Sequence record: MK250017.1
DNA: 64,000 nucleotides
Strand: one strand, 5' to 3'
Shown here piece after piece: positions 1 through 64,000 of this stretch. The notes under the pieces are model-generated. The model was not told the origin of the DNA, did no database searches, and was given only the letters and a program-made list of their open reading frames with translations. The first letter of the stretch is position 1, and every line of letters begins with the position of its first letter. A program made the translations under genes and the position numbers.

Positions 1-1
1 G

Positions 2-538
2 AATAGGTGTATTAAGTTTCCGGATTGTGTTTTAAGTGTTGTTCAATTTATGGAGCTCAAACGTAAAAATTCCATGTGGGGTATTGCAGACCCAGATTTA
101 TCATGGAATCGAATGTTTCAGACAGATATGTGGATGGGACCATAGATGGCAATGGATACTGTTATGTTTAGAACTATATAGTGGTCTAATTGGGATTAGT
201 TGAAGCAGTTTAATTTGGTTGATATAAAGCATAGATGGAATAGACCTACACATTAGTTATTTGTAACTGGACATGATCCATATAATGATGTATATTGTGA
301 ATTAGCAACAAAGGTAGATGATTAGGATTTATTTGAAGATCCTTGGGTTAGACAATGGATTGCAGCTAAGTGTAAATTATAGGTAGTAAAGAAATTAGGT
401 ACATTTACAGTAACAGCGATTGGTGGTGTAACAGTAAATACTGGAACATATTCTGAAGAAGCGAATAATGATATAAATGATTGTAAGGAATATTGGAAAA
501 CTCTTTAGCAAGCAGACTTTTTTGAAACTGGATATTAA
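2..538 (+). CDS. Neck protein, T4 gp13-like (5' partial; 5 in-frame TAG=Gln)
   Basis: Frame 2 is open to TAA 536-538 with TAG read through. C-terminus DLFEDPWVRQWIAAKCKLQVVKKLGTFTVTAIGGVTVNTGTYSEEA resembles the gp13 C-terminal W-V-x-x-Y...GGVT motif. Confidence 0.7.
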
Positions 539-570
539 TTTATTGATTAACAAATAGTTAATATATGTGA

Positions 571-614
571 TATAGGATATTATATTTTAGATGATTAAAA
601 TATAGTATCCTATA
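571..614 (+). terminator. Intrinsic terminator-like hairpin
   Basis: 19-bp arms tataggatattatatttta / taaaatatagtatcctata (one G-U pair), followed by a T-run. Confidence 0.6.
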
Positions 615-662
615 TTTTTATAAAATAAATAATGTAAATTTAATAATAGATTTAAATAAACA

Positions 663-2093
663 ATGGGATATAAAAGATATGGTAGTAGTGAGTCTGTACC
701 AACGTTTAATGATGATAATAATGGGGAAGTTGTTTCAAATGGCATTTTAAAAAATTCATCAAATAAAGAAATATATTTTGGTATTAAGAAACCAAAATCT
801 GCTGCAGATTCAGATAAACCTTGGCGAGAATTAACAACAGATGATTTTGATACATAGATAACAAGTGAAACTGGTGGATGTTCAGCAACAATAACAAAAA
901 ATGATAATGATACCACAAATAAAACAGGTATAATTACATATAGATTATCTAAAAATACAACAGGTAGTAGTAGGTTAATAACATTTAAATATAAAGGTAC
1001 AACATTATTTGAAATAAATTAGGCTGCAGGTCCAGTAGATAATAATACATATGTATATTTAAGATATTGGGTATTTGATAAGTCAACATATGAAAATATT
1101 ATAACATCTGCAAATAATACTACTTAGTTATATCGTTTTTCTCTTGGCATTAACAAAGAAGATGATAATGCGTATATAAGTTATGAAACTTGGAAAACAT
1201 CTGGTAATATAATATATCATGTAACAAATAATGAAGATTTAACTAATATCTTTAATACAGCAACTTCGATAAAAAATTTAGTAGATAATGGAACATTAAC
1301 ATATGTTGCAGGAAAAAATTTTGATAATAATACTATATCAAGTATTATAAAATTCCCAACAAAAATGTATGAAAATGAAAATACACTTATTTCTGTTAAT
1401 GATAATAGTATTGTATACATATATAGTGGCAAATATGAAGCAACTGTTGATGCAAATGATTATTATTTTGATAAAAATAATATACATAGCATTATAAATT
1501 GGGGAAATATTAATAATGATAATGTTACATCTATTGGAAAATATAGATATAATAAAAAATTAGTAATAAAAAAAACATATGAAATTTATATGTTTAAAGT
1601 ATTAACTAGTTGGTTTACTTCACATGGTAATGAAGCATTTTTATTTGTACCGACTAGTGATAGTAGGTATACATCAATCTCTAAAGAAAATGCAGATATA
1701 GATAGATGGGGTTATACATCATTTCCAGTAAGAGACGACGGAAATAAACTATATACATATTTCTTTGTAGAAACAACAAATACTTTAACAATCAATATGC
1801 TTTCTGGTAAAACATTAAAAGAATTAAAAGATAATTATAATTTAACAAAAGTTTCTGGAAATATGTATGAAGAAGATGATACTTATGTAAATAATATATC
1901 AGATAAAGTATTAGTAAATCAATGGAATACTATTATACATAAAACATTAAATAAAAATACAGCAACAGATACTGTTGCTATAGCATGGTTATATGCTTCA
2001 AATGGTTCAGAAATTTATACAAACGCAACATCAAGTAATAGTGTAATAATTGATATGAATAATCCTTCAGGAATATATAATATTACAGTATAA
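663..2093 (+). CDS. BACON-like Ig-domain protein, putative tail/receptor-binding accessory (476 aa, TAG=Gln)
   Basis: Track ORFs 663-857 and 1365-2093 are in the same frame and joined through TAGs. Contains GIITYRLSKNTTGSSRLITFKYKGTTLFEINQ, a BACON-like N-T-x-x-x-R...I-x-Q pattern. Confidence 0.6.
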
Positions 2094-2100
2094 TATTAAA

Positions 2101-2190
2101 TTCGTTATTCAAAAAACATTGAATAACGAATTTTTTATTTATGTAATTTAAGTTGCAGGATCTTATATTTAGACGTATATATAAAAAATG
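2101..2190 (+). repeat. Intergenic terminator+regulatory module, copy 1
   Basis: Hairpin ttcgttattc...gaataacgaa, a 33-bp core aataacgaattttttatttatgtaatttaagtt identical to 3076-3108, and ~30 further similar bases. Confidence 0.8.
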
Positions 2191-2198
2191 AATTTTCC

Positions 2199-3047
2199 AT
2201 GGCAAATTATAAACAAGTTTCTAACATTGGTATAGAAACAATTTCAGCAGATACACATACAAATGAAACATTAAAAGCACATTATCAAAGTAATGATTTA
2301 TAGACTATATATTTTGGATTAAAAGATGATAATGGTAATTATGAAGGTAAGTTAATAGAATCTTCTTATGAATTAATATCTACAATACCTGGATGTTCTG
2401 CAACTATTTCTACTATTGATTTAACAAAAACTGCAGGAATTATTAAATATACGATTTCTAAAAATACAACAAGTAGTGCAAGATTAATAACCTTTAAATA
2501 TAAGAATACTGAATTATTTAAAATAAATTAGGTTGATACTAATACATTAATATATAATTCTGAATATGTATATGTATGTACGGTTGGTAATATATCAAGT
2601 GATCCTAATAAAATATGGTTATTTGCTATACTTGCTGAAAATGGTAGTTTACCTAATAAGTCAGATTTATTAAATAATTATAAAACAATGGTGCAATTTG
2701 ATAGTTCATATGCAGGAGATAATCGAAAAAATGGTAGAACATTGTATTTTTCAGAGAAAACGTTACCTGCAAATAAAACAATACAGGAATTAAAAAATAG
2801 TGGGGTATTAACAGTTGTTAGAGAAAATAAAGTTAAGTATGATACAGATATTCCTTATCATTTAGTACTAGTAAATAATAATGCATATAATGCACCATAT
2901 AATATTTAGTCTAACATTGAAGACGCATTTAAAACTCCATATGAGATGTATGTTATAAATTAGAGTGATACTGTTATTTCATATTAGAAGACAATATTTA
3001 ATATATTTGATTATTATTATTGTGGTATATATAAATTTAATTCATAA
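2199..3047 (+). CDS. BACON-like paralog 2 (282 aa, TAG=Gln)
   Basis: ATG 2199 to TAA 3045-3047. GCSATIST...GIIKYTISKNTTSSARLITFKYKNTELFKINQ is closely similar to the 663-2093 protein. Confidence 0.6.
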
Positions 3048-3053
3048 TAATTA

Positions 3054-3140
3054 TTCGTTATTCAATTTGTTTTTAAATAACGAATTTTTTATTTATGTAA
3101 TTTAAGTTACTGGATTTCATATTTAGGCGTAGATATAAAA
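3054..3140 (+). repeat. Intergenic terminator+regulatory module, copy 2
   Basis: Same hairpin and core as 2101-2190. Confidence 0.8.
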
Positions 3141-3156
3141 ATATATTTTAATTTTT

Positions 3157-3990
3157 ATGTCAACATATAAAGAAACAACAGAACGAGAATTTCATATAAT
3201 TAATTTTATAGATAAATCATTAGTTACATTTACGCCTGATCCAAATATAGGTACGAAAGGGCTATTAGTAAAAGGTGTAAGTGTAAAGGATTCAAATAAA
3301 AAAGATGTTTTTATAGGATTAACTGATGGCACAAAGTTTAAATATTTAACTAATGATGATTATAACATCTATTATCAATCTAGTGATGCAATATATGTTA
3401 CTAAATATGCAGGTTCACAAGGTTGGCCTATATACTTGAATGTTTATAAAGAAAATATAGGGTTAATAGCACATATAAAATATTCATATAATGGAGTATA
3501 TGATTAGTTTTTTACTATCAATTACATACCATATGAAGTATTATTTATGGGTATTTATTATTCAGAAGATATAAGAAATGTGTATTTATTTAGTGAAAAA
3601 TTACCATCATCATATAGTGTAAGTCCATCTAAACATATAGCATTATATTCAAGTGCATCTGGTGATATATCATTATATGGTCCATATATATATTATGATC
3701 CCATGAAAATATTAGGTGGTGATGAAAAAAGTATTGATGATTATGTTAATGAAGGTACAATAACATATAAATCTGGAAATGATTTCAATGCTAATATAAA
3801 AAGTATGTATACAATAGAAGTGACATTTGTAAATATACCAAATACAAATAAAGATACAATAGAAATAAGTGAAAAAACAGATATATATTGCTATGAATAT
3901 ATTAATAATAAGTGGCAAACATATGGTTCTAGATCTTTTATATCACCAACACCATTAGTTTATAAGAGTGTTGCACATTATTCGAAATAA
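3157..3990 (+). CDS. Hypothetical protein, probable distant paralog of the two upstream genes (277 aa, one TAG)
   Basis: Track ORFs 3157-3507 and 3547-3990 are in frame across a single TAG. KDVFIGL echoes KEIYFGI and TIYFGL in the upstream genes. Confidence 0.6.
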
Positions 3991-4051
3991 TAAATTAATA
4001 TAAAAAATATTCATGAATAAATAATAAAAAGTTATTTTTAATATATTTTTT

Positions 4052-4462
4052 ATGAAACATAATATTCCATTAAATATACTAGATGAATATGCAAAAACAA
4101 TTTCATCAAAATAGGTAAAAATGCTTTATGAATCAAAATGTAATAAAAAATTTAAGAAAGCATTATATGAAAATATGAAATATCAAAATGATAATAGTTT
4201 TTCAATATACTTAAATGATTTTACATTAGATGAAGCTCATTCATCTGTTGATAAAGCATTAGTACGTTATGTAAGGAAACATAAACTTCAATATAATAAA
4301 GTCAGTGATGGTGTTTATTTTTATACACCTCTTGAAGAAAATTATATTTCCTTATTAGAAAATCTTGTTCAAGACGGATTTGATATAGATTTATTAAAAG
4401 AAAATGTAGATTCACAAAAAGCTACAGTTTATTTAGAAAAATTAAAGTTAAATAAGAAATGA
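4052..4462 (+). CDS. Hypothetical protein (136 aa, one TAG)
   Basis: ATG 4052 is in frame with the track ORF 4121-4462 through one TAG. Confidence 0.6.
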
Positions 4463-5145
4463 TAAAGATTAGAAGACGTAAACCTATTTTTGAGGATGAT
4501 CAGACTACATAGCAGCAACCTGCAACAGGTACAACAGCACAACCTGCTGCAACACCTGCAAATAATACAACAACTCCAGCTGCACCAACTCAACCTCAGC
4601 AACCTGCATAGCAACCTGCTCAACTTAATAATACTAACACACCTCAGCAACCAGCTGATCAAAATAATCAACAGCAATAGCAACAACCTAATCCTAATGC
4701 TTAGAAAGTTGCAGATGTGTTGAAAAAAATGGAAAATACATGGTGGATGATTTCTGTTAATCTTCCTGATGAAATTCAAAAAGATATTCCTGATTTTAAA
4801 CAAGGAAATCAATAGGCTGATAATGCTATTAAAGCATGGGGAACATTTAAACAGAATCCAACAGAAGATACATTCAAACAATTCTTAGAAGGATTTAAAG
4901 CATTTGGTGGCGTAAATAATGATTAGACAAATAATCAATAGAATAGCCAGCAACCAGCTGCACCAGCTCAACCTCAACAACCAGCATAGCAACCTACTCA
5001 ACCTCAAACAAATGTTAATGCTGGATTAAAAGCTGCATATTCATTCAGAAAGAATCTTATGGAAAATCTTGAGATTGCAAATAAGAAAAAATATTATAAT
5101 TCTGTTTGTGAAGATTATTTTGATAAAACTGAATTTACATTATAA
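4459..5145 (+). CDS. Gln/Pro/Ala/Thr-rich low-complexity protein (228 aa, TAG=Gln)
   Basis: MIKIRRRKPIFEDDQTT*QQPATG...QPQQPA*QPAQ...QQQ*QQPNP: TAGs fall inside Gln runs; stop TAA 5143-5145. Confidence 0.75.
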
Positions 5146-5167
5146 TAAAAATAAATGAATCTAAAAT

Positions 5168-5941
5168 ATGGTTAAAAAATATAAATATGTTTATAATCAA
5201 AAAACTGGACATTTTATAAAAAAACTAAATGAAGATGATTCAAATGTAAGTACAGATACACAACAATAGCAAAATAATAATTCTAATACTACTTCATCAA
5301 CAACTGATAATAAAGATACATCAACAAATAATACATCTTTTAAATCTGTTGAATCTGATGAAACAATTCAAAGTCTCAATGCAAAAATGCAAGATAATGA
5401 AAATAAATTTCAATAGGATTTAAATACATAGCAGAAACTTTTAGATGCTGCTAAAGTTACTGCATCTAAAAAAACACCAACAGGACCATATGACCCTGTT
5501 GCAACAGATGCAGACGTATTAAATATCATGAAAAAAATAAATGATATTACTAAACAACATGCTATTGATATTGCAAATTTTCAAGATTAGAAATTAGCAT
5601 AGCTATAGAAACTATCACAAACAAATGAATCATATTATAAAATTCCAGAAAAATATAAATGGTTAAACGAATCTAATATTCATACTGCAAAAATATATAT
5701 GGGTGATCTTATAGCTCCAGATGATTAGCACATATTAAAAGGTATGGCTGATTTCAAACGTGCTTTTAAAGATACAGATTTATTATACGGGAAAGACAGA
5801 AATGGATACTTTCTTATCGCGGTTGATAAAGATGATATGACAAAAGCATTTGACACACTAGAAGAAATAGGATACCTTCGTGATGAAATAATTGATACAA
5901 TGTTACCATAGGTATTAGATAGAACAAAAATGATTTTATAA
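5168..5941 (+). CDS. Hypothetical protein (257 aa, TAG=Gln)
   Basis: ATG 5168 to TAA 5939-5941 with several TAGs; N-terminal FIKKLNEDD. Confidence 0.7.
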
Positions 5942-5944
5942 TTT

Positions 5945-7224
5945 ATGAAAAATGAAATTTTATCATTAATATAGAATAATGATGGAACTATTAATACTCA
6001 TTTTAAAAAAATATTAAAAACACATAAAGATATTTATGATAAGATCTTATTATATTATGATGATTCAACATCTTTAACAGAAGCAGTATATCGTATAATT
6101 AATAATTTAGATGAAAGACCTAAATGTCCTGTATGCGGTAAAAAATTAAAATTTTATGGGTTTTCTACAGGATTTGCAAAATCTTGTTCTATAAGATGTG
6201 CTCAATATAATATAGAAACATAGTAGAAAATAAAAGAAACATGTTTAAAGAGATATGGTGAAACAAATGCAATGAAAAATAAACAAATATATAATAAAGC
6301 AAAGAATACTATAATTAAAAAATATGGAGTTGATAATGTATCTAAATCTGATATAATTAAATAGAAAAAAGTTGAAACATGTTTAAATAATTATGGTGTT
6401 AAATATTTTTATCGAGATGCACTTAGTTTTATCGAGATGCACTTAGGCATTACATTTACCAGATGTTAAAGAAAAAGCAAGTAAAAATTCTCATACTAAA
6501 GAAGTACGTGACAAAGCAAAGAATACTATAATTAAAAAATATGGAGTTGATAATGTATCTAAATCTGATATAATTAAATAGAAAAAAGTTGAAACATGTT
6601 TAAATAATTATGGTGTTAAATATTTTTATCGAGATGCACTTAGTTTTATCGAGATGCACTTAGCCTATGCAATCTAATATTGTATAGAATAAATCTATGT
6701 AGTCATGTTTAAATATATATGGATGTAAATCTATATCATAGGTGTATTCTATAAAATAGAAGAAAATAGAAACAATGCGCTTACATAATTCTTTTTGTAT
6801 ATCTAAACCAGAAAATAAAATATTGAATATTTTATTAAATAAATATAATGATACATGTTATCAATATAGTTCAGATTTATATCCATTTCATTGTGATTTT
6901 TATATACCATCATTAAATTTATATATAGAATATAATGGTAGTTGGACACATGGAAAACATCCATTTAATAAAGATAATGAAGATGATATAGAAATACTTA
7001 ATAATTGGAAAATTAAATCGGAAACAAGTAAATTTTATAAAAGTGCAATAGAAACTTGGACAATACGAGATGTAAATAAACGCAATTTAGCATATAAAAA
7101 TAAATTAAATTTTATTGAAATCTGGTATGTTTATAAAAATTATCATATAATAGGATATTATCAAGGTAAATATATTGATACTGTTATGCCTTAGCTATTT
7201 GATAGACATGAAATGATACAATAA
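5945..7224 (+). pseudogene. Free-standing homing-endonuclease-like gene (Zn finger, KYGV repeats, PD-(D/E)xK domain), frameshifted by two 40-nt inserts
   Basis: CPVC...CSIRC Zn motif, repeats of KYGVDNVSK/YGVKY, and catalytic-like YPFHCDFYIPSLNLYIEYNGSWTHG. The frame is continuous only if 6407-6446 and 6624-6663 are removed. Confidence 0.7.
6296..6663 (+). repeat. 151-bp direct repeat (6296-6446, 6513-6663), each copy ending in 2x TTTTATCGAGATGCACTTAG
   Basis: Direct reading of the sequence. Confidence 0.9.
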
Positions 7225-7231
7225 TTTAATT

Positions 7232-8005
7232 ATGCATTATATACAAGAAACAGATAATTTTAACATAAATCTTCCTTTGTATGGTTCATATTTATTATAT
7301 AATCCAAATACAAAAGAAACTGTAGTTAAAAAATCACCAAATCCTAAATATATTTCTGCTGATACATTTATTGATGTTGCTAATGAACTTAAACAAATTG
7401 CAACGGACTTAAAAATTACACCTACTGAATTACCATTATTTCAATATATTAGATATAGTCGCTATAAAGACGCAACATGGACAATTATTGCAGGTACAAT
7501 AGATAATAATTTTAAAGTGAAAGCAGATGTATCATATTCAATGGTTCCTAATATTCAATAGATGATTTTACCTTCAAAAGAAACTTTAGATTTTCCTCAT
7601 TTTTGTGGAACTATAAACGGTTTAATAAAAGGACATGGTGATCTTTGTGGATGGGCAGGTGATGCAGTCGAATATGCAGCAGATTTAATGAAAGATTAGA
7701 ATGCAGTATTTCCATCAGGTGGGTTTGACAGTGAAGATTTAAGAACTGATTTAGATGCTTATAATTTATATAATATTAGTAATACAAATATTATAGATAA
7801 TATAAAATCATATTATGAAAATATTACAGATAGTAAAAGAATTTCATTATTTTTAAAAGGTGGTGAAAATATTACTACAAGATTTAACAGTTCACCAGAT
7901 ATATTTTATCTTAATATATTAAAACAAAAGATGAATGTAACTGATGAATATATGACATTAGCATTAAATAAAATACAAACATATATGGATAAAAATAAAG
8001 GTTGA
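7232..8005 (+). CDS. Hypothetical protein with DLCGWAGD...GFDSEDLRTDLDAYN motif (257 aa, TAG=Gln)
   Basis: Track ORF 7232-7561 continues through TAG to TGA 8003-8005. Confidence 0.65.
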
Positions 8006-8034
8006 TAATTTTCGATATTATCAACCTTTATTTT

Positions 8035-8682
8035 TTATAAACTTGCAATATATTTCTTTATACCTTCCACATGAATATCTGTAATTATATTTCTACCTTC
8101 ATTACTTAATAACCATGTAGCATCTTCTTTATTATCCATAAACATATTTTCTGTTAAACATGCAGGACATGCAGTTTTTGATAATACATAATAATTTGCT
8201 TCCTGATCAGGATCACCATCTGAATTATCAGGGCGTAATTTCTTACCCAATGGTTTTAATTTAGATTCGGCAACTTCATAGATACATGTTGCTAATTTAT
8301 CTGCAGATGTTTGTCCTTTACTTGTATATACAGACCAACCTTGTGCATTCATCCATGAACCATTTCCAGCGGCATTTACATGAATAGAAATAAAAATTGC
8401 TTTATTTCCCTTTGCTTTTTCTTCAAGATATTTTTTATTAGCACGTTGAACTCGAAGATTTAAATCATAAGATTGACTTGTAATCTCTTCCACTTCAGGA
8501 TGTGTAATATAACATCTATATCCTCCTGAAATTAACTTATTGTAAACTTCATATCCTATTGCACGAACATATGCATATTCTTTTAACTATGTTTTACCAT
8601 CGTCAAATACAGGACTGGATTTCCCTGGTGTATTACAACCATGTCCCATATCAAGCATTACTAAAACTTTACTCTTTTCCAT
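8035..8682 (-). CDS. N-acetylmuramoyl-L-alanine amidase (Amidase_3), endolysin (215 aa, one TAG)
   Basis: VMLDMGHG, QLKEY, FISIHVNAA and CLTENMFMDN supply the His/Glu/His Zn ligands and the catalytic Glu. Start ATG 8682; TAG at codon 32. Confidence 0.88.
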
Positions 8683-8684
8683 AA

Positions 8685-10160: not shown

Positions 10161-10190
10161 TAAAATAAACTACTATTTTAAATATTTATT

Positions 10191-53947: not shown

Positions 53948-53962
53948 TAAAGAATTATAATA

Positions 53963-54361
53963 ATGAATTATAAAGAAACATATTTAAAACCAGAAATTGC
54001 ATTCTTACTGAAAAAGCATAACTATAATATCGATAAAACTCGATATATGGTAAACAGAGACGGAACATTAGTTGAATCTACTAATGAATTATAGAAACAT
54101 TATAATCATTTAGAATTAGCTTATAATCCTAATGCAGAAGAAGTAATCGATTATTTCAAAAAACAATCAATCTATATTAACATTAATAAAGTAGATAATA
54201 ATAAATGGGAATGGATTATTTCATTTGGTAAGAAATCTGTATATTCTGGTGAAACTGCAAACGGAAATATCGGGCATAATCTTCCAGAATCACGTCAATT
54301 TTTTAACAATGAAAAAGACACATATTATGATGCAGTTATAGAACTTATTGTTTTAATTTAA
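53963..54361 (+). CDS. Hypothetical protein (132 aa, one TAG)
   Basis: ATG 53963 to TAA 54359-54361; MNYKETYLKPEIAFLLKK. Confidence 0.6.
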
Positions 54362-54424
54362 TATATAAGAGGATATGGATTTAATTCTATATTCTCTTTT
54401 TTTTTTTCTTTCAAATAAAATATG

Positions 54425-54432
54425 TATCTTTG
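54425..54432 (+). promoter_or_regulatory. TAnnTTTG promoter element
   Basis: TATCTTTG after a terminator (54367-54398) and upstream of the cca gene. Confidence 0.65.
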
Positions 54433-54462
54433 TATAAAATATGAATTAATAATTATAAGAGA

Positions 54463-55716: not shown

Positions 55717-55767
55717 AACAATTTATTGGTTAAACATTATAAACATTAATTAAAACAGTTATTAGAT

Positions 55768-55917
55768 ATGGATTTAAATATTACACAGAGAGAAGGAATT
55801 AAGAAGTGTCTCTATGAGGATTTAAAGAAAATGTATGATGCATTTATTTTGACTGATAGAGATAAGGTAGAAAGTGTATTTAATGAGTTTTTGAATAAAT
55901 GTGAACGTTATATTTAA
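55768..55917 (+). CDS. Small hypothetical protein (49 aa)
   Basis: MDLNITQREGIKKCLYEDL...CERYI, fills the gap between larger genes. Confidence 0.45.
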   Translation: MDLNITQREGIKKCLYEDLKKMYDAFILTDRDKVESVFNEFLNKCERYI

Positions 55918-55923
55918 TTTGAT

Positions 55924-56322
55924 ATGAATTATTTTACTCATACAGTAGATGATAATATTTGTAAGTGGTTACTTGATAATAAGTTTCCACTTACAACGTG
56001 TATACGAAATGATCATGATGAATCATTATATTATACATTGCCATATGAAGATTCTGATGGATGGCAATATTGTGATGCATATTATAAACCTACATATTTT
56101 GATGTAAAAGAATGGTTATATAAAGAACATAATATACTTATTAATTCGAATATTTATACTGATAGATTTTCTGTACAAATTAGATATAAATCAAAATCAG
56201 ATAAGTATTTTGGAAACTGTTGGGAAATTGGTTATGGTTGTAAAACATTTGAAGATTGTTTAAAATCTGCAATTGAATATATTATTGAAAATAATATACT
56301 GAACGAAAAGAGTACAGAATAA
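55924..56322 (+). CDS. Hypothetical protein
   Basis: 132-aa ORF. Confidence 0.6.
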   Translation: MNYFTHTVDDNICKWLLDNKFPLTTCIRNDHDESLYYTLPYEDSDGWQYCDAYYKPTYFDVKEWLYKEHNILINSNIYTDRFSVQIRYKSKSDKYFGNCWEIGYGCKTFEDCLKSAIEYIIENNILNEKSTE

Positions 56323-56327
56323 TTTAA

Positions 56328-56870
56328 TTATGTTAAAGGATTAAATAATTCCTTTTGTTCTTTAATATATTTTTTTGCTTCAGGTAGATTATCAAATAAA
56401 ATATCATTTTCATCAGGTTGACAGTAAACCATATTTCCATCATCTTCTATAATATAGATAATACCGAATGTATCTTGCATTGATGTTGGTTCAATTGGTT
56501 TACTGAATATGATTTTTCTTATTTGATTATCTACAATTACATAGTAAATATTTGCATTTGCATCTATATTACTAGTCCATTTACCGATATAATTTATTTT
56601 ATCATCATATGATGATAATTCATTATTCATGACATTATCACCGAAAAATGAAGCTAGGTAATTATTATTTGCATTTACTTTATCTATGTTATCTCTAATA
56701 AGTCCATCAGATGTTAAATTAATTTGTGATTTATTATCATCTGGATAAAAATATCCACCTATTATAATATCATCAAATTCATCATTATCTTCTTTTGGAT
56801 TTAACAACATATCAGATAAGTTATTTAACTGAGGAATATATTTATGTAATAATTTATAGGTATATTTCAT
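56328..56870 (-). CDS. Hypothetical protein
   Basis: 180-aa ORF on the opposite strand to its neighbours. Confidence 0.6.
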   Translation of the reverse strand: MKYTYKLLHKYIPQLNNLSDMLLNPKEDNDEFDDIIIGGYFYPDDNKSQINLTSDGLIRDNIDKVNANNNYLASFFGDNVMNNELSSYDDKINYIGKWTSNIDANANIYYVIVDNQIRKIIFSKPIEPTSMQDTFGIIYIIEDDGNMVYCQPDENDILFDNLPEAKKYIKEQKELFNPLT

Positions 56871-56908
56871 TTAATTTATTATATATAAACTTTAAAATAT
56901 TTATTTAT

Positions 56909-57223
56909 ATGATTATAACATATACAGCATTTGATGGAAAGGTATTTAATGATCAAAAGGAATGTGAAGACTATGAATATAAATTAAAACTTTTAGGAGT
57001 TGCATATTCAGAATTCAGTAAATTTCTTGATAAAATTCCAGAAGATTATAATGATAATCTTTGGATATGTAAAGAAAAATTAGAAATTAATGATGCATGT
57101 GGACAAGAACTTCCTACAATTGGAGATACTATAAAGGTTTTAACAAAAGATGATTTATCACATATGAGAGTAATTAAGACTCTGCTTAAAAATTTTAAAT
57201 TGGATGATAATGGAAACAACTAG
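56909..57223 (+). CDS. Hypothetical protein
   Basis: Likely start ATG 56909: MIITYTAFDGKVFNDQKECEDYE. Confidence 0.6.
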   Translation: MIITYTAFDGKVFNDQKECEDYEYKLKLLGVAYSEFSKFLDKIPEDYNDNLWICKEKLEINDACGQELPTIGDTIKVLTKDDLSHMRVIKTLLKNFKLDDNGNN

Positions 57224-57758
57224 AAATGTTATAGATAAAATTAAATATCTATATAAAAGGTTATATAAAGCCGAATTATTTTCTTCATCGTTAGCAGTTC
57301 GTATGAATGAGCGTGATGACTTTTATGAATATTCTAGACAACATCAACCAGCGTTTAAGATAGCTATGATGGAATTACTTAGTCATCCAGATGAAATGAA
57401 TGCTCGTATTCCTTTTTACTGTTGTTATATATTACGTGAAAATGATTTTCTTAAATTATATGAAAATAAAAAGGATAAATTACCTTTAAATGAAGATTAT
57501 GAATGGGATGAATGTAATTTATGGTTAAATCATTTTAAATCAACAAAAAATATAGATTACTACAAAGATTACAAAGAATATAAAAGATATTTAAATCTGA
57601 ATTTTAAACCATTTAATCCATTTACTGGTAAAGATCCAAATCCTACATATGAAGAATATATCAGAAAAAGAGATTCTATCGATTCAATAAATAAATTTGT
57701 AACTAAATTAATAAAAGATAATAATATAAAGATAACATGGAAGTACGAGACGAAGTAA
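57204..57758 (+). CDS. Hypothetical protein
   Basis: 184-aa ORF overlapping its neighbours. Confidence 0.6.
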   Translation: MIMETTRNVIDKIKYLYKRLYKAELFSSSLAVRMNERDDFYEYSRQHQPAFKIAMMELLSHPDEMNARIPFYCCYILRENDFLKLYENKKDKLPLNEDYEWDECNLWLNHFKSTKNIDYYKDYKEYKRYLNLNFKPFNPFTGKDPNPTYEEYIRKRDSIDSINKFVTKLIKDNNIKITWKYETK

Positions 57759-58078
57759 AAAAGCGTATGGAAGAATCGTTAAAAGGATGTAAGATTATAG
57801 ATAAACAAGACACACCTAAAACTACAATACTTCCAGATCTTTCAGATCCTGCTGAATATAAAAGATGGTTTAATATGGGTCCAAAAGAAGCAATGGTAAA
57901 TCTACAAAAATATGTTGATTTAAACAAGAAAGATAATATTAACTTTGAAACGGAGTTTAACTATCTTTATACGAATGGTGGAATTTGTGGATGGAATAAA
58001 ATACCATATACAACATTTTATAATATTATATATGGTAAACAGCGTGTTGATTTTAATGGTAATTTAACAAATAATTAA
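57737..58078 (+). CDS. Hypothetical protein
   Basis: 113-aa ORF. Confidence 0.55.
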   Translation: MEVRDEVKKRMEESLKGCKIIDKQDTPKTTILPDLSDPAEYKRWFNMGPKEAMVNLQKYVDLNKKDNINFETEFNYLYTNGGICGWNKIPYTTFYNIIYGKQRVDFNGNLTNN

Positions 58079-58081
58079 AAC

Positions 58082-58228
58082 ATGAATGTAGAACGAGCAT
58101 TATTAAAATTAAATAAATTAAAATCTGAAATGGAATTAGAATGCTTTTATAACACCAATGTTGAATATAAAGCAAAACCATGGTTAGAATTGGTGGAAGA
58201 TACTATAGCATTTTTAGATGGTAAATAA
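58082..58228 (+). CDS. Small hypothetical protein (48 aa)
   Basis: MNVERALLKLNKLK...LDGK, tightly packed between neighbours. Confidence 0.45.
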   Translation: MNVERALLKLNKLKSEMELECFYNTNVEYKAKPWLELVEDTIAFLDGK

Positions 58229-58243
58229 AATTTATATAAAGTT

Positions 58244-58597
58244 ATGTCATATAATTTAATACCAAAATATTATACATTATATCCTGAGTGTTCAAGTTCA
58301 ACTTATTTATATTTTCATGATGAACCTTATGCTTATTGGTTAGAGAATAGTGAATATAAAGTTTATGAATGGGTTTTGTTTAAAGAATACAATGATTATA
58401 AATCTGTATGTCATCCAAATGATTGTATATCTGCAATAAGTTATAATGATCTCATTGATTCATTTAAAACATATTCATTTTATGAGAATATGGATCGTGA
58501 AAAGATGTGTAGAACATTTAGGCAAAGATCATTAGAAACAGAATTTGGACCTGAATCTGAACCTTATTGGGATTTTGAAGATTTTATTGAAGAATAA
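58244..58597 (+). CDS. Hypothetical protein
   Basis: 117-aa ORF. Confidence 0.55.
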   Translation: MSYNLIPKYYTLYPECSSSTYLYFHDEPYAYWLENSEYKVYEWVLFKEYNDYKSVCHPNDCISAISYNDLIDSFKTYSFYENMDREKMCRTFRQRSLETEFGPESEPYWDFEDFIEE

Positions 58598-58616
58598 TAT
58601 ATTTTTATATATGAAA

Positions 58617-58646
58617 ATGGGAGATGAAACTTATTTCATCTCCCAT
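58617..58646. terminator. Perfect 13-bp hairpin with a 4-nt loop between convergent genes
   Basis: atgggagatgaaa-ctta-tttcatctcccat. Confidence 0.7.
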
Positions 58647-58667
58647 ATATTTTTATTAATAGTTTTA

Positions 58668-59567
58668 TTAATATTCTAAAGTTAAGAAACCTAAGACACA
58701 GCCGTCGTAGTCCTTATCGTAGCTGCCGATGCCACCATTATTGAGACCGACAAAGTACTCATAGCTACTTGATTTCTCTCTACTACTCCAATAATAGCCG
58801 TCATAGAAACCTCTACCAACCAATGCAGTTCTCTTTTCATTTATAGCTGTTTTATTCGCATAAATCTGATATAATTCACCAGGAGTTGGTAAATACCAGT
58901 CACCTGATTTTGTACCTGGTGTTGAATATGCAACGCAGCAACATGCTGGAGCACAGTAACCAATACCAGAATTATTTGTTATACCATTACATATATATGG
59001 ATCTTGTTTTGTTGCTTTAGATAAACATTGTTGTGTATTCCATTTACCACCTATATATGCTGTTGAATTCGTACCACCTTTTACATTACCTACTGTAGTA
59101 CCATAATTACCAAACGTTATATTATATGGAGAAACTTGTCCCTCTGCTGGATATGCTGGATGCATATAATTTATAGAAACGAATCTAGCTGTTTTTACAG
59201 CACCCGTTGAATCATCACCATTTTTGAAGTTTTCTGAAACTTCAGGGATTACACAAATTGCAATAGGTGTATTATCTACATTGTTTGTTTGTGCGTCAAG
59301 TGTAAGTTTACCATCTGAAGTAGAATAAAGAACATCTGCAACTGCAGGAATTTTCTTTATTGATGATGAATCCAATTTAACTGGTGCCATATTTACTGAA
59401 CCTAACATAACACAATTGGCATCTGGATGTCTCTGACAATAAATAGACGCATCCTCTATTCCTTTTGTCGGTTTCACATCGAATACATATGCACCATCTC
59501 CATGATTAATTAATGAAACTGATAAATCTAACTCAGATTTACTATCAAATACGTTAAAATATTTCAT
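58668..59567 (-). CDS. C-type-lectin-fold (DUF1566/Lcl-like) protein, candidate DGR target
   Basis: DWYLPTPGELYQIY...YYWSSRE...YFVGLNNGGIGSYDKDYDGCVLGF at the C-terminus; NNC-codon-rich 3' end. Confidence 0.7.
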   Translation of the reverse strand: MKYFNVFDSKSELDLSVSLINHGDGAYVFDVKPTKGIEDASIYCQRHPDANCVMLGSVNMAPVKLDSSSIKKIPAVADVLYSTSDGKLTLDAQTNNVDNTPIAICVIPEVSENFKNGDDSTGAVKTARFVSINYMHPAYPAEGQVSPYNITFGNYGTTVGNVKGGTNSTAYIGGKWNTQQCLSKATKQDPYICNGITNNSGIGYCAPACCCVAYSTPGTKSGDWYLPTPGELYQIYANKTAINEKRTALVGRGFYDGYYWSSREKSSSYEYFVGLNNGGIGSYDKDYDGCVLGFLTLEY

Positions 59568-59800
59568 AATATATTTTAAAATTATAATATTTATATAGTC
59601 AATAAATAATTTTCATGAAATCATATATATTAATAAACATAGCTAAATAGATATTTAATAATTAATTATATTTTCATAAAACTTAAATAATTCTATCAAA
59701 TTTCTATCAATTTAACTTTATTTTTATTAAAATTTCATATAAATTTTAATAAATTTTTTCAACCAGTATATAGTATCTGTGATTAATTATTTTATACTAA

Positions 59801-61729
59801 TTATGAATTATTTATAATTTTTTCTACTTCTGCTCTTTTCTTTGCAGATACAATCCAACCCGGTGTTTTAACACCATTTATATTTAAGAATTTATTATAT
59901 CGACAACCAATTTCTTTTAACTTATCTTTAATAGGAAGAATATCTTTATAATCACCATATATAGCAATAGCTCTATCTGAATAATCATAAATCTTTACAT
60001 TACTATTATTTGTTACTTCAGTTCCCTTATTATTTTCAGAATTAACTTCTGTATTATTTGTTGTAGTAATATCTGATTTACGTGGTCTTCCTCTACGTTT
60101 CTTTACCTGTTGAATTTCATCATTATTTGTTTCATCTGATGTATGTTTAACAACATTATTTTCTTTTGCTTTATTTCTTAATTCTTTCCTTAATTGTTTA
60201 GCTTCTTCTTTTCGTTGTTCAACAATTTTAGCTCTACGTTCTTCAACAGGTTTAACAATTACATCGCGTAAAGTTTCTGTACCACCTTTTTCAAGTTTAA
60301 ATGATGTATGATCTAACCATTTACAGAATGCTTCATATGTCTTATATGTATTTGTAACTGACATACGTTTCGCAAGAATATATGAAATAAATCTATCACC
60401 TAATGATTTTATACGTATTACCCAGTTATTACCAAAATATGTTGTGTCAGGTTTTAAATATTTGATACAGTTTTCTTTCATTAATTCTGCATCTTCTTTC
60501 TTATCTTCTGTACGTTTATTTACAGAATCAATTTTTGCTTTTTCTTTTGCTTCTTGTGCTTCTTTATTATCTGGTTCTACATATTCTCTATGTGGTCCAT
60601 CCTTTGAACTATAGCAATCAAGGAACCAATCTTTCGATGTCAATATTGTTTTCCATTGTGGTTTTGTTGGTTTCCATCGTCTACAATTAGCCTCAAATTT
60701 ATAAGGACCTAACTGGATCATAATTCCATAATTTTTACCAGGGAATCCACATGCTTCAAAATTAAATTTAGGTAAATTTCCCATAGTAATACCTTCAAAT
60801 GACATATAAGGCAAAACTCTCCATGGTAATTGTCTAACTCTTGCTGTCAATTCTGAACAGTTAGAAGGGAAACCAACAAAATTTATTTTAACTTTCCCGT
60901 CTAATGGTTGATATGGTTGATTAACAGTTCTTTCATCATTAAATTCTAATTGAGCTCTATATGTTCCATTAGGTAAACCTGTAAGATTTCCTGTTTTTGG
61001 TAATCCTTTATATGAATAAACATCATTTCTGAATGATGTATTTATTTTCTTAATAAATGAATAATCATTCATATTATAACATTCCATTAAACTTATTGAA
61101 TCAGTTGATTCAATGTTAATAGTTTCATTATCAATCCAACATCTTAATAAATTAATATCAACATCACCTTTATAATAATAGTTATGTTCATCAAATACAG
61201 TAGAATATAATTTTTCTTCTTTAATAACATCACCATTAACATAAAAGTTTTTTGGATAAACACCCTTTAAACCGACACTAATAAAATTGATATTTTTTAA
61301 GTCTATTATATTATTAATTGCATCTGAATCTTTTGCGTTTACATATCTTCCAACTTCTAGATTATATCTAAGCAATACATTACTGATACTGAATTCATTA
61401 AGTTCATCAATAAATTTCTGTGCATCATTTAAACGTCTAAAAGATACATGTGTTAAATAAACTTTTGGTTCTTCTGGTTTTTTTGTTTCATAATAGAAAG
61501 CTACTGTAGACCCTTCTACTTCTGAATGAACTTTTTTATCTACTGCATTTTTAATATCAATATAGCTATTACTGAATGTTTGCTCTGTTAAATACGATTC
61601 ACAATATGTTAACATATTTTTCGTTATCTTACCAGCAAGATCAGATGATAAATCATCTTGGTTATCTACAATATCCTCAAAATCATCATCAAATAAACTT
61701 TCAATCAAACGTTTTACACATTTATTCAT
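59801..61729 (-). CDS. Multidomain hypothetical protein with an AT-hook and a small C-terminal domain (642 aa)
   Basis: KKRRGRPRKS AT-hook; C-terminal YSDRAIAIYGD...IKDKLKEIGCRYN...GWIV. Confidence 0.7.
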   Translation of the reverse strand: MNKCVKRLIESLFDDDFEDIVDNQDDLSSDLAGKITKNMLTYCESYLTEQTFSNSYIDIKNAVDKKVHSEVEGSTVAFYYETKKPEEPKVYLTHVSFRRLNDAQKFIDELNEFSISNVLLRYNLEVGRYVNAKDSDAINNIIDLKNINFISVGLKGVYPKNFYVNGDVIKEEKLYSTVFDEHNYYYKGDVDINLLRCWIDNETINIESTDSISLMECYNMNDYSFIKKINTSFRNDVYSYKGLPKTGNLTGLPNGTYRAQLEFNDERTVNQPYQPLDGKVKINFVGFPSNCSELTARVRQLPWRVLPYMSFEGITMGNLPKFNFEACGFPGKNYGIMIQLGPYKFEANCRRWKPTKPQWKTILTSKDWFLDCYSSKDGPHREYVEPDNKEAQEAKEKAKIDSVNKRTEDKKEDAELMKENCIKYLKPDTTYFGNNWVIRIKSLGDRFISYILAKRMSVTNTYKTYEAFCKWLDHTSFKLEKGGTETLRDVIVKPVEERRAKIVEQRKEEAKQLRKELRNKAKENNVVKHTSDETNNDEIQQVKKRRGRPRKSDITTTNNTEVNSENNKGTEVTNNSNVKIYDYSDRAIAIYGDYKDILPIKDKLKEIGCRYNKFLNINGVKTPGWIVSAKKRAEVEKIINNS

Positions 61730-61787
61730 ATTTTATAATTAAAAATTAACTTTTATTATTTATTAAAAATAAAAGGTACAAGTTATA

Positions 61788-62978
61788 TTATCTAACTGTA
61801 CCTTTTCCGAAAACTTTATTAATATCTCGCTTAATTTCTATTATCGTATTCTTTATATATGTTTTATCATAATCCAATATATAATCTTTAAATCTACTAC
61901 CATTATACTTATATCCTTTAAGTTCATGAAATAACTATAATACACGACTTAAACAATCTGTATATGTATTATTATCAATTTTACATATTATTAATGTATC
62001 ATATATTTTTTGTTTTATATCATTAAACTATTTCTTTAATACATAAAAATCTCCTTCTGTATTATGAATTAATCTGTTAATACCTTTTGATGTATATCCT
62101 GTAGATATAAGTAATGCTCTATCTACTAATGTATTATATTTGTTAAATGGTGTTCTTATTTTTAGATTTAAGACTGTATTGAAATTCGTATCTGATTTTT
62201 GTCCAAGTTTTTTAAAGGTACCATCTTTATTAAATTCGCAATCAATTGCAATAGGTGCAGGCATAACATATGTTTTAAAATATTCAGCTTCACCTGTTTC
62301 TGAATTACAGAAATAAAAGAAAAATACAGTAGTAATATTTCGAAGACATGTTTGACATTTATTTTCTTTTATTTCCAACTATCGCATATCATTTAAAATC
62401 TAATCAATACCTTTCATTGCATTATTAACTTTACCCTTAAATGTATTATCATCAAAGAAACTACATAAAACTGATTTAACTTCTATATATGTTTCATCAC
62501 CATTTGGATATGTTAATTTAATATCTGGACATTCATTCCTACCATTTGGTTCATGTTCAATTTTATAACCATCGGTTTCTGAAAATATTCTATGTACAAT
62601 ATATTCTGATGTATCATGACATAAAGTCATAAGCATTGAATCTTTATATAACAGTTTATTTTCATATGACATAAACTATGTTAATGAACCATTAAATGTA
62701 ATATCTTCAGTATCTTTATAGATTTCTGTAAAATTCGGTTCTGGTAATGAAAGTGTTAAATAATAATCATCCATATAAGTATAAATGGAATTGTACAATT
62801 TATAGAACTATCGTTTATACTCATCATCAGTAGAATACTCTAACCACTATCGAATACTTTCTTCCAAATCATTTGCTACAAAAATACTATCATCTAATGA
62901 TGATAGAAACTATCGTCTTTCCTATGGATTATTAATACATTTAAGAATACGCTACGGACTTTTTGATTTATTTAACAT
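61788..62978 (-). CDS. PD-(D/E)xK nuclease-like protein (396 aa, TAG=Gln)
   Basis: ECPDIKLTYPNGDETYIEVKS; ATG 62978 to TAA 61788 joins two track ORFs. Confidence 0.6.
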
Positions 62979-63023
62979 TTTTTATTTTAGATTTATTTTA
63001 ATACATATTATAATGAAACTGTA

Positions 63024-63383
63024 TTAAAAAGTCTTTTTAAAATTAATCAAAGATTCTGTTATGTTTATAATTGTATCTCCTTTATAAACTGTTTCATTGA
63101 AATGATATTCATCTATAAGTTTCCCTTGTTTTGTCCGTATATTTAATTTCACATTAAAATTTAAAACATCATTATCTTCATCAGATGCAATTAAATATTC
63201 ATCATCAAATTTCATAATTACATGATGTTCAGAATGTTCGTCTCCTATTAATACATTTAAATTTGTTATGCAATAATTTTTAATTTTATTCTTTACAATA
63301 ACATTAAATCTTTTATCTGATAATTTTCGTTCATTATTTTTATTATCATTAAAAATATTTCTTAATAACGTAATCAATTTCAT
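63024..63383 (-). CDS. Hypothetical protein
   Basis: 119-aa ORF. Confidence 0.55.
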   Translation of the reverse strand: MKLITLLRNIFNDNKNNERKLSDKRFNVIVKNKIKNYCITNLNVLIGDEHSEHHVIMKFDDEYLIASDEDNDVLNFNVKLNIRTKQGKLIDEYHFNETVYKGDTIINITESLINFKKTF

Positions 63384-63468
63384 TTATTCTTAACAATTTA
63401 TTTTCACCTAAAAATAAAAAGGAATATACTATCACAATATATTCCTTTTATTTTATATATTTTGTCTT

Positions 63469-64000
63469 TTATTTATATTTAACCATATAATTAAATACCT
63501 GATCAAATGTTGATCCAATTGACCAGAAATTTTTTATATCTTTTATACTTTCATCTGCTACTATAACTGTTGTATCATAAAATTCATTATCATAAACTTC
63601 AGTTAACATTCTTAATTCATCACTTATTATACAAATGGTATTTTCTGTTTGAAATTGTCTTGTTAACTTCAATTCTTTATCATCATTATATAAATTATAT
63701 GGATATTCTTTATAAATGTCGATAATAGGATTTATAGCAATGAGATTTCCATCATAAAAAGATTGTAACCAGAAGTATGCTGCAGGTCCATCTGTTATAA
63801 CACATGCATATTTGTCTATACATGCATATATAGTTTCAGAATCAATTTCCATCTGTATGTTTTCTGGTACATAATTATATTGTTTCTGTATATCATTAAA
63901 TAGTTTAAAGACTATATCATAATTATCACCATAACAAAATTTTATTTGTTCTATAAACATATTATAACGTTTATCAGTATTATAATCATGATCAAGAATA
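63469..64000 (-). CDS. Hypothetical protein (5' partial)
   Basis: The frame stays open upstream of ATG 63960 to the window edge. Confidence 0.55.
   Translation of the reverse strand, partial: ILDHDYNTDKRYNMFIEQIKFCYGDNYDIVFKLFNDIQKQYNYVPENIQMEIDSETIYACIDKYACVITDGPAAYFWLQSFYDGNLIAINPIIDIYKEYPYNLYNDDKELKLTRQFQTENTICIISDELRMLTEVYDNEFYDTTVIVADESIKDIKNFWSIGSTFDQVFNYMVKYK

What the first reader, a model, noticed from the sequence alone, without database searches (positions are those of the whole stretch)
1..64000. TAG recoded to Gln, partitioned sharply between late and early gene blocks
Seen: terminase (>15 TAGs), neck, baseplate, endolysin and other genes in 1-14345 and 30587-50456 are intact only if TAG is a sense codon. 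The TAG-free blocks (14359-30535 except one endonuclease, and 53474-61729 except one codon) include RF2, CCA enzyme and the ABC module; none of the genes I called ends in TAG. TAG sits inside Gln runs (4459-5145) and in conserved YPMQ- and ARQ-type contexts, which points to Gln. Established: amber-to-Gln recoding occurs in Lak and some crAss-like phages and is enriched in structural and lysis genes. Inference: the code acts as a temporal switch. Genes needed before the switch are readable by the host's standard code; late genes are not.
Basis: partly seen in the sequence, partly recalled or inferred. Interest (0 to 1): 0.72.

Follow-up and report, generated by a model that had tools for sequence, protein, structure and literature searches.

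The report
Known amber-to-glutamine recoding in Lak megaphage
This window is part of the published Prevotella megaphage Lak-A1, whose reading of the stop codon TAG as glutamine in virion and lysis genes but not in many other genes is already described; I confirm it and add that the two gene classes sit behind two different promoter-like motifs.

Summary
The window is 100% identical to Prevotella phage Lak-A1 (MK250017.1, 294061-358060). With TAG as a sense codon, coding density rises from 65% to 94%. In the two TAG-rich blocks it rises from about 50% to 94-98%.

TAG stands for glutamine:
- It aligns with invariant Gln columns of the terminase and a neck protein.
- It faces CAG in a standard-code homologue.
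- It exchanges mainly with CAA/CAG between Lak-A1 and Lak-B4.
- Two tRNA-CUA genes lie elsewhere in the genome.

The partition is sharp: 6 TAG against 175 CAA/CAG in the TAG-poor blocks, 198 against 247 in the TAG-rich blocks. It is specific to the reading frame. It is conserved gene by gene in Lak-B4 and is not explained by base composition.

All of this, and the "code as late-gene switch" idea, is published (Devoto 2019, Crisci 2021, Borges 2021).

New here: genes directly behind a host-type -7 box (TATCTTTG) are TAG-free in 38 of 39 cases. Genes behind a T4-late-like ATAAATA motif carry TAG in 66 of 89 cases. This supports an early/late split. It also shows that transcription already separates the classes, so TAG may be a lock or only a by-product. 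No timing data exist.

The parts
1..14345 (.). TAG-rich block 1: 15 genes, 14 with in-frame TAG. It includes a head-tail adaptor-like gene (50-538, 7 TAG), an Amidase_3 endolysin (8035-8682, minus strand, 1 TAG) and TerL.
10638..12791 (+). Large terminase with 18 in-frame TAG. Many fall in columns that are Gln in nearly all homologues.
5945..7224 (+). Homing endonuclease of a multi-copy family (10 TAG). In this strain two 40-nt insertions split it into ORFs 5945-6469 and 6610-7224.
14359..24237 (+). TAG-free run of 14 genes. It includes an ABC transporter module: a substrate-binding protein fused to an OmpA domain (18649-20238), a permease (20757-21593) and an ATPase (21599-22543).
24324..24349 (.). 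N run 1: an exact-length mask, intergenic, just upstream of the late-type motifs at 24357 and 24368 and of tRNA-Leu.
24480..24566 (+). tRNA-Leu (anticodon UAA), the only tRNA in the window. It is not a suppressor.
24595..25398 (+). Gene with a zinc-finger part and an endonuclease-like part, 5 TAG, inside the TAG-free block. It ends 2 nt before RF2. Its paralogue in the big tRNA array has 14 TAG.
25401..26537 (+). Release factor 2 (prfB), TAG-free. It is one ORF with no +1 frameshift. It has GGQ, and SPY in place of SPF. It is present in all 15 Lak records.
26643..30535 (+). TAG-free genes behind two host-type motifs (26594 and 28898).
30587..50456 (.). TAG-rich block 2: 10 genes with 1 to 32 TAG each. 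The 862-aa protein (38117-40705) gave only weak tube or baseplate fold hints.
34764..36314 (-). Neck protein with 13 TAG. The N-terminal domain resembles T4 gp14; the C-terminal domain is a jelly-roll. TAG codons 51 and 113 fall in invariant Gln columns.
46111..46131 (.). N run 2: an exact-length mask, intergenic, between two minus-strand genes.
51544..52443 (+). DNA methyltransferase, TAG-free. The next gene (52475-53467, 8 TAG) follows after 31 nt and has its own late-type motif.
53474..61729 (.). TAG-poor block with only two TAG codons (54092-54094 and 57221-57223). It includes the CCA-adding enzyme (54463-55716).
61788..62978 (-). 396-aa gene with 10 TAG and a PD...EVK nuclease-like motif, read by eye only. 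It is conserved with 9 TAG in Lak-B4.
18201..18209 (+). Host-type promoter-like motif GTATCTTTG, which contains the Bacteroidetes -7 consensus TAnnTTTG. Further copies start at 23277, 23860, 26594, 28898 and 54424. All are on the plus strand, intergenic, 30-51 nt before a TAG-free gene.
10604..10611 (+). Late-type motif [AT]ATAAATA, 34 nt before TerL. Further copies lie 28-39 nt before TAG-bearing genes at 624, 4016, 12792, 38081, 52447 (plus strand) and 10190, 38059, 45621, 50486 (minus strand). Copies also precede TAG-free genes at 56905, 59595 and 61764 (minus strand).

Best explanation
The window is part of Prevotella megaphage Lak-A1, which reads TAG as glutamine (genetic code 15).

Shown here:
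- TAG is a sense codon in 30 of the 64 genes called.
- It behaves as a synonym of CAA/CAG.
- The genome carries two tRNA genes with a CUA anticodon. One has the acceptor stem of the phage's own tRNA-Gln.
- The genome also carries its own RF2, which does not read TAG, and a CCA-adding enzyme.
- RF2, the CCA enzyme and every gene directly behind a host-type promoter-like box are kept free of TAG by selection.
- Genes behind a T4-late-like motif (terminase, neck, adaptor and other virion-block genes, plus several nucleases) carry TAG freely.

Inferred mechanism: after infection the host RNA polymerase and the host's standard code express the TAG-free set. The suppressor tRNA accumulates, and phage RF2 keeps termination at TAA and TGA going. 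Only then can TAG-bearing late messages be translated to full length. TAG thus adds a translational lock on late and potentially harmful proteins, on top of promoter control.
For: - Identity: 100% to Lak-A1.
- Coding density: 94% against 65% in the window; 90% against 66% in the genome.
- TAG as Gln, terminase: Q fills 272 of about 590 cells in the TAG columns, against a background of 4.5%.
- TAG as Gln, standard-code homologue: a homologue with no in-frame TAG has CAG at 5 conserved TAG columns.
- TAG as Gln, Lak-B4: opposite 161 Lak-A1 TAG stand TAG 70, CAA 26, CAG 5, GAA 10, AAA 7.
- TAG as Gln, neck protein: two invariant Gln columns are TAG.
- Suppressors: two tRNA-CUA genes; one has U1-A72, G2-C71, G3-C70 and A73, like the phage tRNA-Gln.
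- RF2 scores above the curated cut-off.
- Partition: Fisher p 1e-28, with equal out-of-frame TAG.
- Conservation: 32 TAG-free Lak-A1 genes hold only 7 TAG in Lak-B4. CAA/CAG aligned to TAG is 1 of 167 there, against 30 of 210 in TAG-bearing genes (p 2e-7).
- Composition: GC3 is 0.138 against 0.134.
- Motifs: genes directly behind the host-type box are TAG-free in 38 of 39 cases, with 1 TAG against 159 CAA/CAG. Genes behind ATAAATA carry TAG in 66 of 89 cases, with 433 against 898.
- Motif controls: the link holds only on the sense strand and at the right distance. It recurs in Lak-B4.
- Published model.
Against: - There are no time-resolved RNA or protein data. RNA-library contigs cover both classes and cannot rank them.
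- The motifs are promoter-like by position, strand and consensus only. No transcription start has been mapped.
- Separate promoter classes could set the timing without any help from TAG.
- The endolysin has only 1 TAG among 6 Gln-type codons, so lysis genes are not specially loaded here.
- Five TAG-free genes (14359-18139) follow a TAG-bearing gene after 13 nt with no host-type motif. Three TAG-free genes sit behind the late-type motif.
- RF2 itself has no recognised motif, and part of its upstream spacer is masked.
- How host RF1 is overcome is unknown.
- Gln at TAG has not been seen in Lak protein.
Confidence: 0.62

Rival explanations
1. By-product, not switch. Timing is set wholly by the two promoter classes. 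TAG is tolerated and drifts into genes that are translated when the suppressor is plentiful. It is purged from genes translated before that. It has no regulatory role of its own.
For: - Two distinct motif classes already separate the genes.
- The constraint is one-sided: host-type genes are never TAG-bearing, while 23 of 89 late-type genes are TAG-free.
- TAG sits mostly at variable positions and exchanges with GAA, AAA and GAT as well as with CAA/CAG.
- The endolysin carries only 1 TAG.
Against: - TAG makes up a third of Gln-type codons in late genes, and 70 of 161 TAG are conserved between Lak-A1 and Lak-B4.
- TAG-bearing genes hold more Gln-type codons overall, 4.0 against 2.4 per 100.
- Nuclease genes placed inside TAG-free operons are heavily TAG-loaded. 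That fits a lock on harmful proteins that are co-transcribed with early genes.
- Several phage clades have converged on the same pattern.
Confidence: 0.3
2. Host antagonism. Recoding together with phage RF2 serves mainly to disturb host translation or to escape host defences, not to time the phage's own genes (the idea of Ivanova 2014).
For: - The phage brings its own RF2 without the autoregulatory frameshift.
- A suppressor tRNA would make host genes that end in TAG read through.
- The idea is quoted.
Against: It does not explain why TAG is excluded gene by gene from genes behind the host-type motif, nor why that exclusion is conserved. Nothing in the window bears on host shut-off. It is not exclusive of the best explanation.
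Confidence: 0.1
3. Ancestry. The TAG-free blocks are recent imports from standard-code bacteria or phages (ABC transporter, RF2, CCA enzyme) that have not yet had time to gain TAG.
For: Several TAG-free genes have bacterial-type functions. The substrate-binding gene (18649-20238) has the highest GC (0.36) and prefers CAG.
Against: - GC and GC3 of TAG-free and TAG-bearing genes do not differ (p 0.6).
- The same genes are TAG-free in Lak-B4 at 40-94% protein identity. Their Gln codons changed often, 55 of 167 to another residue, but only 1 to TAG.
- RF2 is in all 15 Lak genomes.
- Most TAG-free genes have no known bacterial relative.
Confidence: 0.03
4. TAG encodes some other residue, or several, or the TAG-bearing frames are decaying pseudogenes.
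For: At variable columns homologues show E, K, N and S opposite TAG. Many database homologues are themselves recoded and were translated with Q, which could make the evidence circular.
Against: - At conserved columns Q is nearly the only residue, and these are real CAG or CAA codons in a table-11 homologue and in a recoded relative.
- CAA, two mutational steps away from TAG, is the commonest replacement.
- The frames stay open over up to 1386 codons with 32 TAG and no TAA or TGA.
Confidence: 0.03

Closest known systems
Lak megaphage code 15, as published (Devoto et al. 2019, PMC6784885; Crisci et al. 2021, PMC8346664)
   Same: It is the same genome. Those papers report:
- coding density under 70% with code 11;
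- TAG read as Gln;
- TAG absent from large parts of Lak-A1 and Lak-A2 and used where structural proteins are encoded;
- CUA suppressor tRNAs, a universal tRNA with a TAA-reading anticodon, and RF2.
   Different: Nothing in the core finding differs. Added here: a codon-level comparison of Lak-A1 with Lak-B4, showing that TAG-free status is under selection, and two upstream motifs that track TAG status. None of the three papers I searched contains the word 'promoter'.
The model of stop-codon recoding as a regulator of late and lysis genes (Borges et al., bioRxiv 10.1101/2021.08.26.457843)
   Same: Early genes are readable by the host code. Code-change genes (release factor, tRNA) are written in standard code. 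Structural and lysis genes are recoded, and homing endonucleases inside early regions are recoded too.
   Different: In Lak the recoded modules are scattered, and the replication genes are mostly recoded. In this window RF2 is not next to the lysis gene or to the suppressor tRNAs, which lie more than 100 kb away in the genome. The endolysin is only lightly recoded.
Block-wise dual coding in crAss-like phages (Mgcod, bioRxiv 10.1101/2022.06.29.495998; proteomic proof, PMC9523058)
   Same: The genomes divide into blocks that use or avoid a reassigned stop codon. TAG as Gln was confirmed by mass spectrometry in two crAss-like phages (abstracts).
   Different: It is a different phage lineage, with one contiguous recoded unit rather than a mosaic. 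No protein-level proof exists for Lak.
T4-type late transcription (late promoter TATAAATA read by gp55; PMC1524935)
   Same: The motif before TAG-bearing Lak genes, [AT]ATAAATA, matches the T4 late consensus. In T4 relatives the first T is likewise often A. Lak also has a T4 gp14-like neck protein.
   Different: I did not look for gp55, gp33 or clamp homologues in Lak. The motif's role is inferred from position and strand only.
Amber suppressor tRNA-Gln (supE type) of E. coli
   Same: A tRNA-Gln-like molecule with a CUA anticodon inserts Gln at UAG in competition with RF1 (my own knowledge).
   Different: Here it is phage-encoded, paired with a phage RF2, and used at hundreds of codons.

Membership tests
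Genetic code 15 (TAG read as Gln) phage | Reading TAG as sense restores long ORFs and coding density | tested here: met
   Density is 93.7% against 65.0% in the window and 90.2% against 65.8% in the genome.
Genetic code 15 (TAG read as Gln) phage | TAG aligns with Gln in homologues that encode it by CAA or CAG | tested here: met
   Shown in the terminase and the neck protein, in a table-11 homologue and a recoded relative, and in the codon comparison of Lak-A1 with Lak-B4.
Genetic code 15 (TAG read as Gln) phage | The genome carries a suppressor tRNA with a CUA anticodon | tested here: met
   There are two, at MK250015.1 225329-225401 and 226234-226308 (minus strand), outside the window. One has a Gln-like acceptor stem. 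Charging with Gln was not tested.
Genetic code 15 (TAG read as Gln) phage | TAG is not used as a terminator | tested here: met
   ORFs in the TAG-free blocks are identical under both codes. One case is ambiguous: 57221-57223, 5 codons before a TAA.
Genetic code 15 (TAG read as Gln) phage | Gln found at TAG positions in the protein | not testable with these tools
   This needs virion or metaproteome mass spectrometry.
Prevotella phage Lak-A1 | Nucleotide identity to the published genome | tested here: met
   Identity is 100% to MK250017.1 over every stretch tried. It is 98.6-99.2% to Lak-A2 and Lak-C1 and about 80% to Lak-B.
Code-switch regulation of late genes (Borges model) | Structural and lysis genes carry the recoded stop | tested here: met
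   TerL has 18 TAG, the adaptor 7, the gp14-like neck protein 13 and the endolysin 1.
Code-switch regulation of late genes (Borges model) | Code-change machinery is written in standard code | tested here: met
   RF2 and the CCA enzyme have no TAG in Lak-A1 or Lak-B4. The suppressor tRNAs sit in a TAG-free gene array.
Code-switch regulation of late genes (Borges model) | TAG-free genes are expressed before TAG-bearing ones | tested here: inconclusive
   Motif classes fit this: the host-type -7 box precedes TAG-free genes in 38 of 39 cases. There are no timing data, and RNA contigs cover both classes.
Bacterial release factor 2 (prfB) | Family profile above the curated cut-off, plus the GGQ motif | tested here: met
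   TIGR00020 scores 406.5 bits against a cut-off of 370. GGQ is present. The protein aligns over its full length to E. coli RF2.
Bacterial release factor 2 (prfB) | SPF tripeptide that reads the stop codon | tested here: not met
   The aligned tripeptide is SPY. The effect on specificity is unknown. All other features are those of RF2.

The most novel reading that the evidence does not exclude
In Lak phages the code partition is tied to a two-class transcription programme. Genes directly behind a box matching the host's primary-sigma -7 consensus are TAG-free almost without exception. Genes behind a T4-late-like ATAAATA box carry TAG freely. TAG-loaded nuclease genes are embedded in otherwise TAG-free operons. 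If the motifs are real promoters, this gives a sequence-only classifier of early and late genes for an uncultured megaphage. It also gives a sharp test of whether TAG adds control beyond transcription. The three Lak and recoding papers I searched do not mention promoters.
Probability: 0.5. Interest if true: 0.45.

Novelty: already known. Interest (0 to 1): 0.28.

Why it matters
A virus that changes how its host cell reads the genetic code partway through infection is one of the clearest natural cases of a flexible code. It also matters in practice: gene callers that use the standard code shatter these genomes. For this window the phenomenon and the switch hypothesis are already published, so the finding adds no new biology.

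The useful additions are quantitative. TAG-free status is held by selection across Lak clades. TAG status follows two promoter-like motifs. This gives the hypothesis a concrete prediction that can be tested on metatranscriptomes or in reporter assays.

Tried and rejected
- No whole genome is held for the window. I fetched MK250015.1 outside the window's span instead.
- PHROGs, NCBIfam and PDB sequence searches found nothing for most large proteins of the TAG-rich blocks.
- The 862-aa protein folded poorly (pLDDT 57). Foldseek gave no match below E 0.001, only weak tube or baseplate rows. 'Baseplate' therefore stays unverified.
- The homologue search with RF2 returned only near-identical Lak sequences. 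I could not judge how rare SPY is.
I sent that protein nowhere else afterwards.
- RNA-library runs are kept as contigs only. They cover TAG-bearing and TAG-free genes alike, and one contig crosses the 14345/14359 border. This shows neither timing nor a shared transcript.
- Many database homologues are themselves recoded and were translated with Q. I therefore relied on a table-11 homologue and on codon-level comparison.
- I rejected recent import as the cause of TAG-free blocks.
- I rejected base composition as the cause.
- Loci L016 and L017, fetched for gene context, include the stretch that corresponds to N run 1. I neither read nor printed that part.


Full report
**Identity and gaps**

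The window has 26% G+C and two N runs. Its terminase region and a 751-nt stretch are 100% identical to Prevotella phage Lak-A1 record MK250017.1, so the window is 294061-358060 of that record. Three other Lak-A1 records differ by two 40-nt indels. Lak-A2 and Lak-C1 are 93-99% identical and the Lak-B phages 74-80%.

Queries that span each N run map to the Lak-A1 records as one colinear piece of exactly the query length, with only the N letters mismatched. The runs are therefore exact-length masks with continuous flanks. Both are intergenic and no gene call crosses them. I never read the masked letters in another copy.

- With TAG read as sense I genes covering 93.7% of the window. Under table 11 the coverage is 65.0%.
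- The gain is confined to 1-14345 (49% to 94%) and 30587-50456 (52% to 98%).
- In 14359-30535 and 53474-61729 the ORFs are the same under both codes.
- In-frame TAG against CAA+CAG is 6 against 175 in the TAG-poor blocks and 198 against 247 in the TAG-rich ones (p 1e-28).
- Out-of-frame TAG is equally frequent in both. The depletion therefore acts on the reading frame, not on base composition.
- TerL has 18 TAG.
- TAG sits inside Gln runs in 4459-5145.
- Annotation confirms:
  - TerL, an adaptor-like protein and an Amidase_3 endolysin;
  - RF2 above NCBI's curated cut-off, a CCA-adding enzyme and an ABC transporter module;
  - a neck protein whose N-terminal domain matches T4 gp14.
- Two small corrections. 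The second TAG-poor block has two TAG codons, not one. One of them (57221-57223) lies five codons before a TAA and could act as a stop.

**TAG means glutamine**

- In a 35-sequence terminase alignment, the conserved TAG columns are Gln in 28-33 of 34 homologues, against a background of 4.5%.
- Many database homologues are themselves recoded. I therefore checked a homologue whose gene has no in-frame TAG: it has CAG at five conserved TAG columns. A recoded relative has CAA or CAG at seven.
- Opposite 161 Lak-A1 TAG codons, Lak-B4 has TAG 70 times, CAA 26, CAG 5, GAA 10 and AAA 7. CAA is two mutational steps from TAG, so this is synonymous behaviour.
- Two TAG codons of the neck protein fall in invariant Gln columns.
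- Outside the window the genome has two tRNA genes with a CUA anticodon. One shares U1-A72, G2-C71, G3-C70 and A73 with the phage's own tRNA-Gln genes.

**The partition is selected, and it is a mosaic**

- Genome-wide, 224 of 575 called genes carry TAG. If TAG were spread evenly over Gln-type codons, 167 genes would be TAG-free; 351 are.
- Same-strand neighbours less than 30 nt apart agree in TAG status 80% of the time (z 8.3). Opposite-strand neighbours agree at chance level.
- The 32 TAG-free window genes with a Lak-B4 orthologue hold only 7 TAG there. Only 1 of their 167 CAA/CAG codons faces TAG, against 30 of 210 in TAG-bearing genes (p 2e-7).
- GC3 is the same in both classes. This rules out recent import from standard-code sources.
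- Borders can be very tight: 13 nt at 14345/14359, 6 nt at 53467/53474 and 2 nt between the TAG-bearing endonuclease-like gene and RF2.

**New here: two promoter-like motifs track TAG status**

- An unbiased k-mer comparison of upstream regions gave GTATCTTTG for TAG-free genes (25 of 90 against 0 of 81). It gave ATAAATA for TAG-bearing genes (56 of 81 against 13 of 90).
- TATCTTTG fits the Bacteroidetes primary-sigma -7 consensus TAnnTTTG.
  - 50 of its 80 copies are intergenic, in a genome that is 9.8% intergenic.
  - They lie 30-50 nt before start codons, and 44 of 45 precede TAG-free genes.
- Genes directly behind this motif are TAG-free in 38 of 39 cases (1 TAG against 159 CAA/CAG).
- Genes behind [AT]ATAAATA at 26-42 nt carry TAG in 66 of 89 cases (433 against 898).
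- The link vanishes on the antisense strand and at other distances. It recurs in Lak-B4.
- ATAAATA matches the T4 late promoter consensus.
- In the window all six host-type sites precede TAG-free genes. Ten late-type sites precede TAG-bearing genes, including TerL. Three late-type sites precede TAG-free genes.

**What this means**

The asymmetry is what the switch model predicts. Genes read by the unmodified host must avoid TAG; late genes need not. It equally shows that transcription already separates the classes. TAG may therefore be an added lock, most plausibly on nucleases embedded in early operons, or simply a tolerated by-product. RNA-library contigs cover both classes and cannot settle timing.

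**Novelty**

- Devoto 2019 reports code 15, TAG-free regions and structural genes in TAG regions for Lak-A1 and Lak-A2.
- Crisci 2021 reports TAG as Gln from terminase alignments, the CUA and TAA-reading tRNAs, and RF2.
- Borges 2021 sets out the temporal-switch model, including recoded homing endonucleases and release factors written in standard code.
- The finding is therefore already known. The motif link was not found in these three papers.

Noticed in passing
window 6407-6446 and 6624-6663: Each site holds a tandem pair of the same 20-mer (19-nt core TTTATCGAGATGCACTTAG). The sites occupy the same position in two copies of a 111-nt internal repeat (6296-6406 and 6513-6623). The 20-mer occurs nowhere else in the genome. 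It is missing from three other Lak-A1 records and from a near-identical ENA contig. The two 40-nt insertions split a homing endonuclease of about 400 aa into two ORFs.
   Followed up: partly
window 25401-26537: The phage RF2 has SPY where bacterial RF2 has the stop-reading SPF. It has an insertion of about 8 residues after the GGQ region. It lacks the +1 frameshift that autoregulates prfB in many bacteria. I could not judge how common SPY is.
   Followed up: partly
window 56909-57238: This gene in the TAG-poor block has a TAG five codons before its TAA and overlaps the start of the next gene (57204). The Lak-B4 orthologue ends about six codons earlier with TAA TAA. This TAG could stop translation early in infection and be read through later.
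   Followed up: partly
MK250015.1 290204-290276 (minus strand), outside the window: A tRNA with a TTA anticodon (ochre type) exists although 89% of called genes end in TAA. Crisci 2021 reports it as universal in Lak and unexplained.
   Followed up: no
MK250015.1 225329-226308 (minus strand), outside the window: The two tRNA-CUA genes flank a 256-aa gene with 11 TAG, inside an otherwise TAG-free minus-strand array. A loose host-type box (TATGTTTG) lies upstream at 230849.
   Followed up: partly
window 14359-18139: Five TAG-free genes follow the TAG-bearing gene 12828-14345 after only 13 nt. No host-type motif precedes them. Their promoter class is unknown, and a third class is possible.
   Followed up: no
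window, all genes: TAG-bearing genes hold more Gln-type codons in total (4.0 per 100: 2.2 CAA/CAG plus 1.8 TAG) than TAG-free genes (2.4 per 100). TAG therefore adds to the ordinary Gln codons rather than only replacing them.
   Followed up: no
window 18649-20238: This gene fuses a substrate-binding protein to an OmpA-like domain and heads the ABC module. It has the highest GC in the window (0.36) and prefers CAG over CAA (11 against 2), unlike its neighbours.
   Followed up: no
window 34764-36314 (minus strand): The gp14-like neck protein carries a large C-terminal jelly-roll domain. Its fold resembles pentraxin and lectin-type beta-sandwiches. This is a fold resemblance only.
   Followed up: partly
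window 24357-24375: Two late-type motifs lie right after N run 1 and about 110 nt before tRNA-Leu, the endonuclease-like gene and RF2. Because the spacer is partly masked, I cannot tell which promoter class drives RF2.
   Followed up: no
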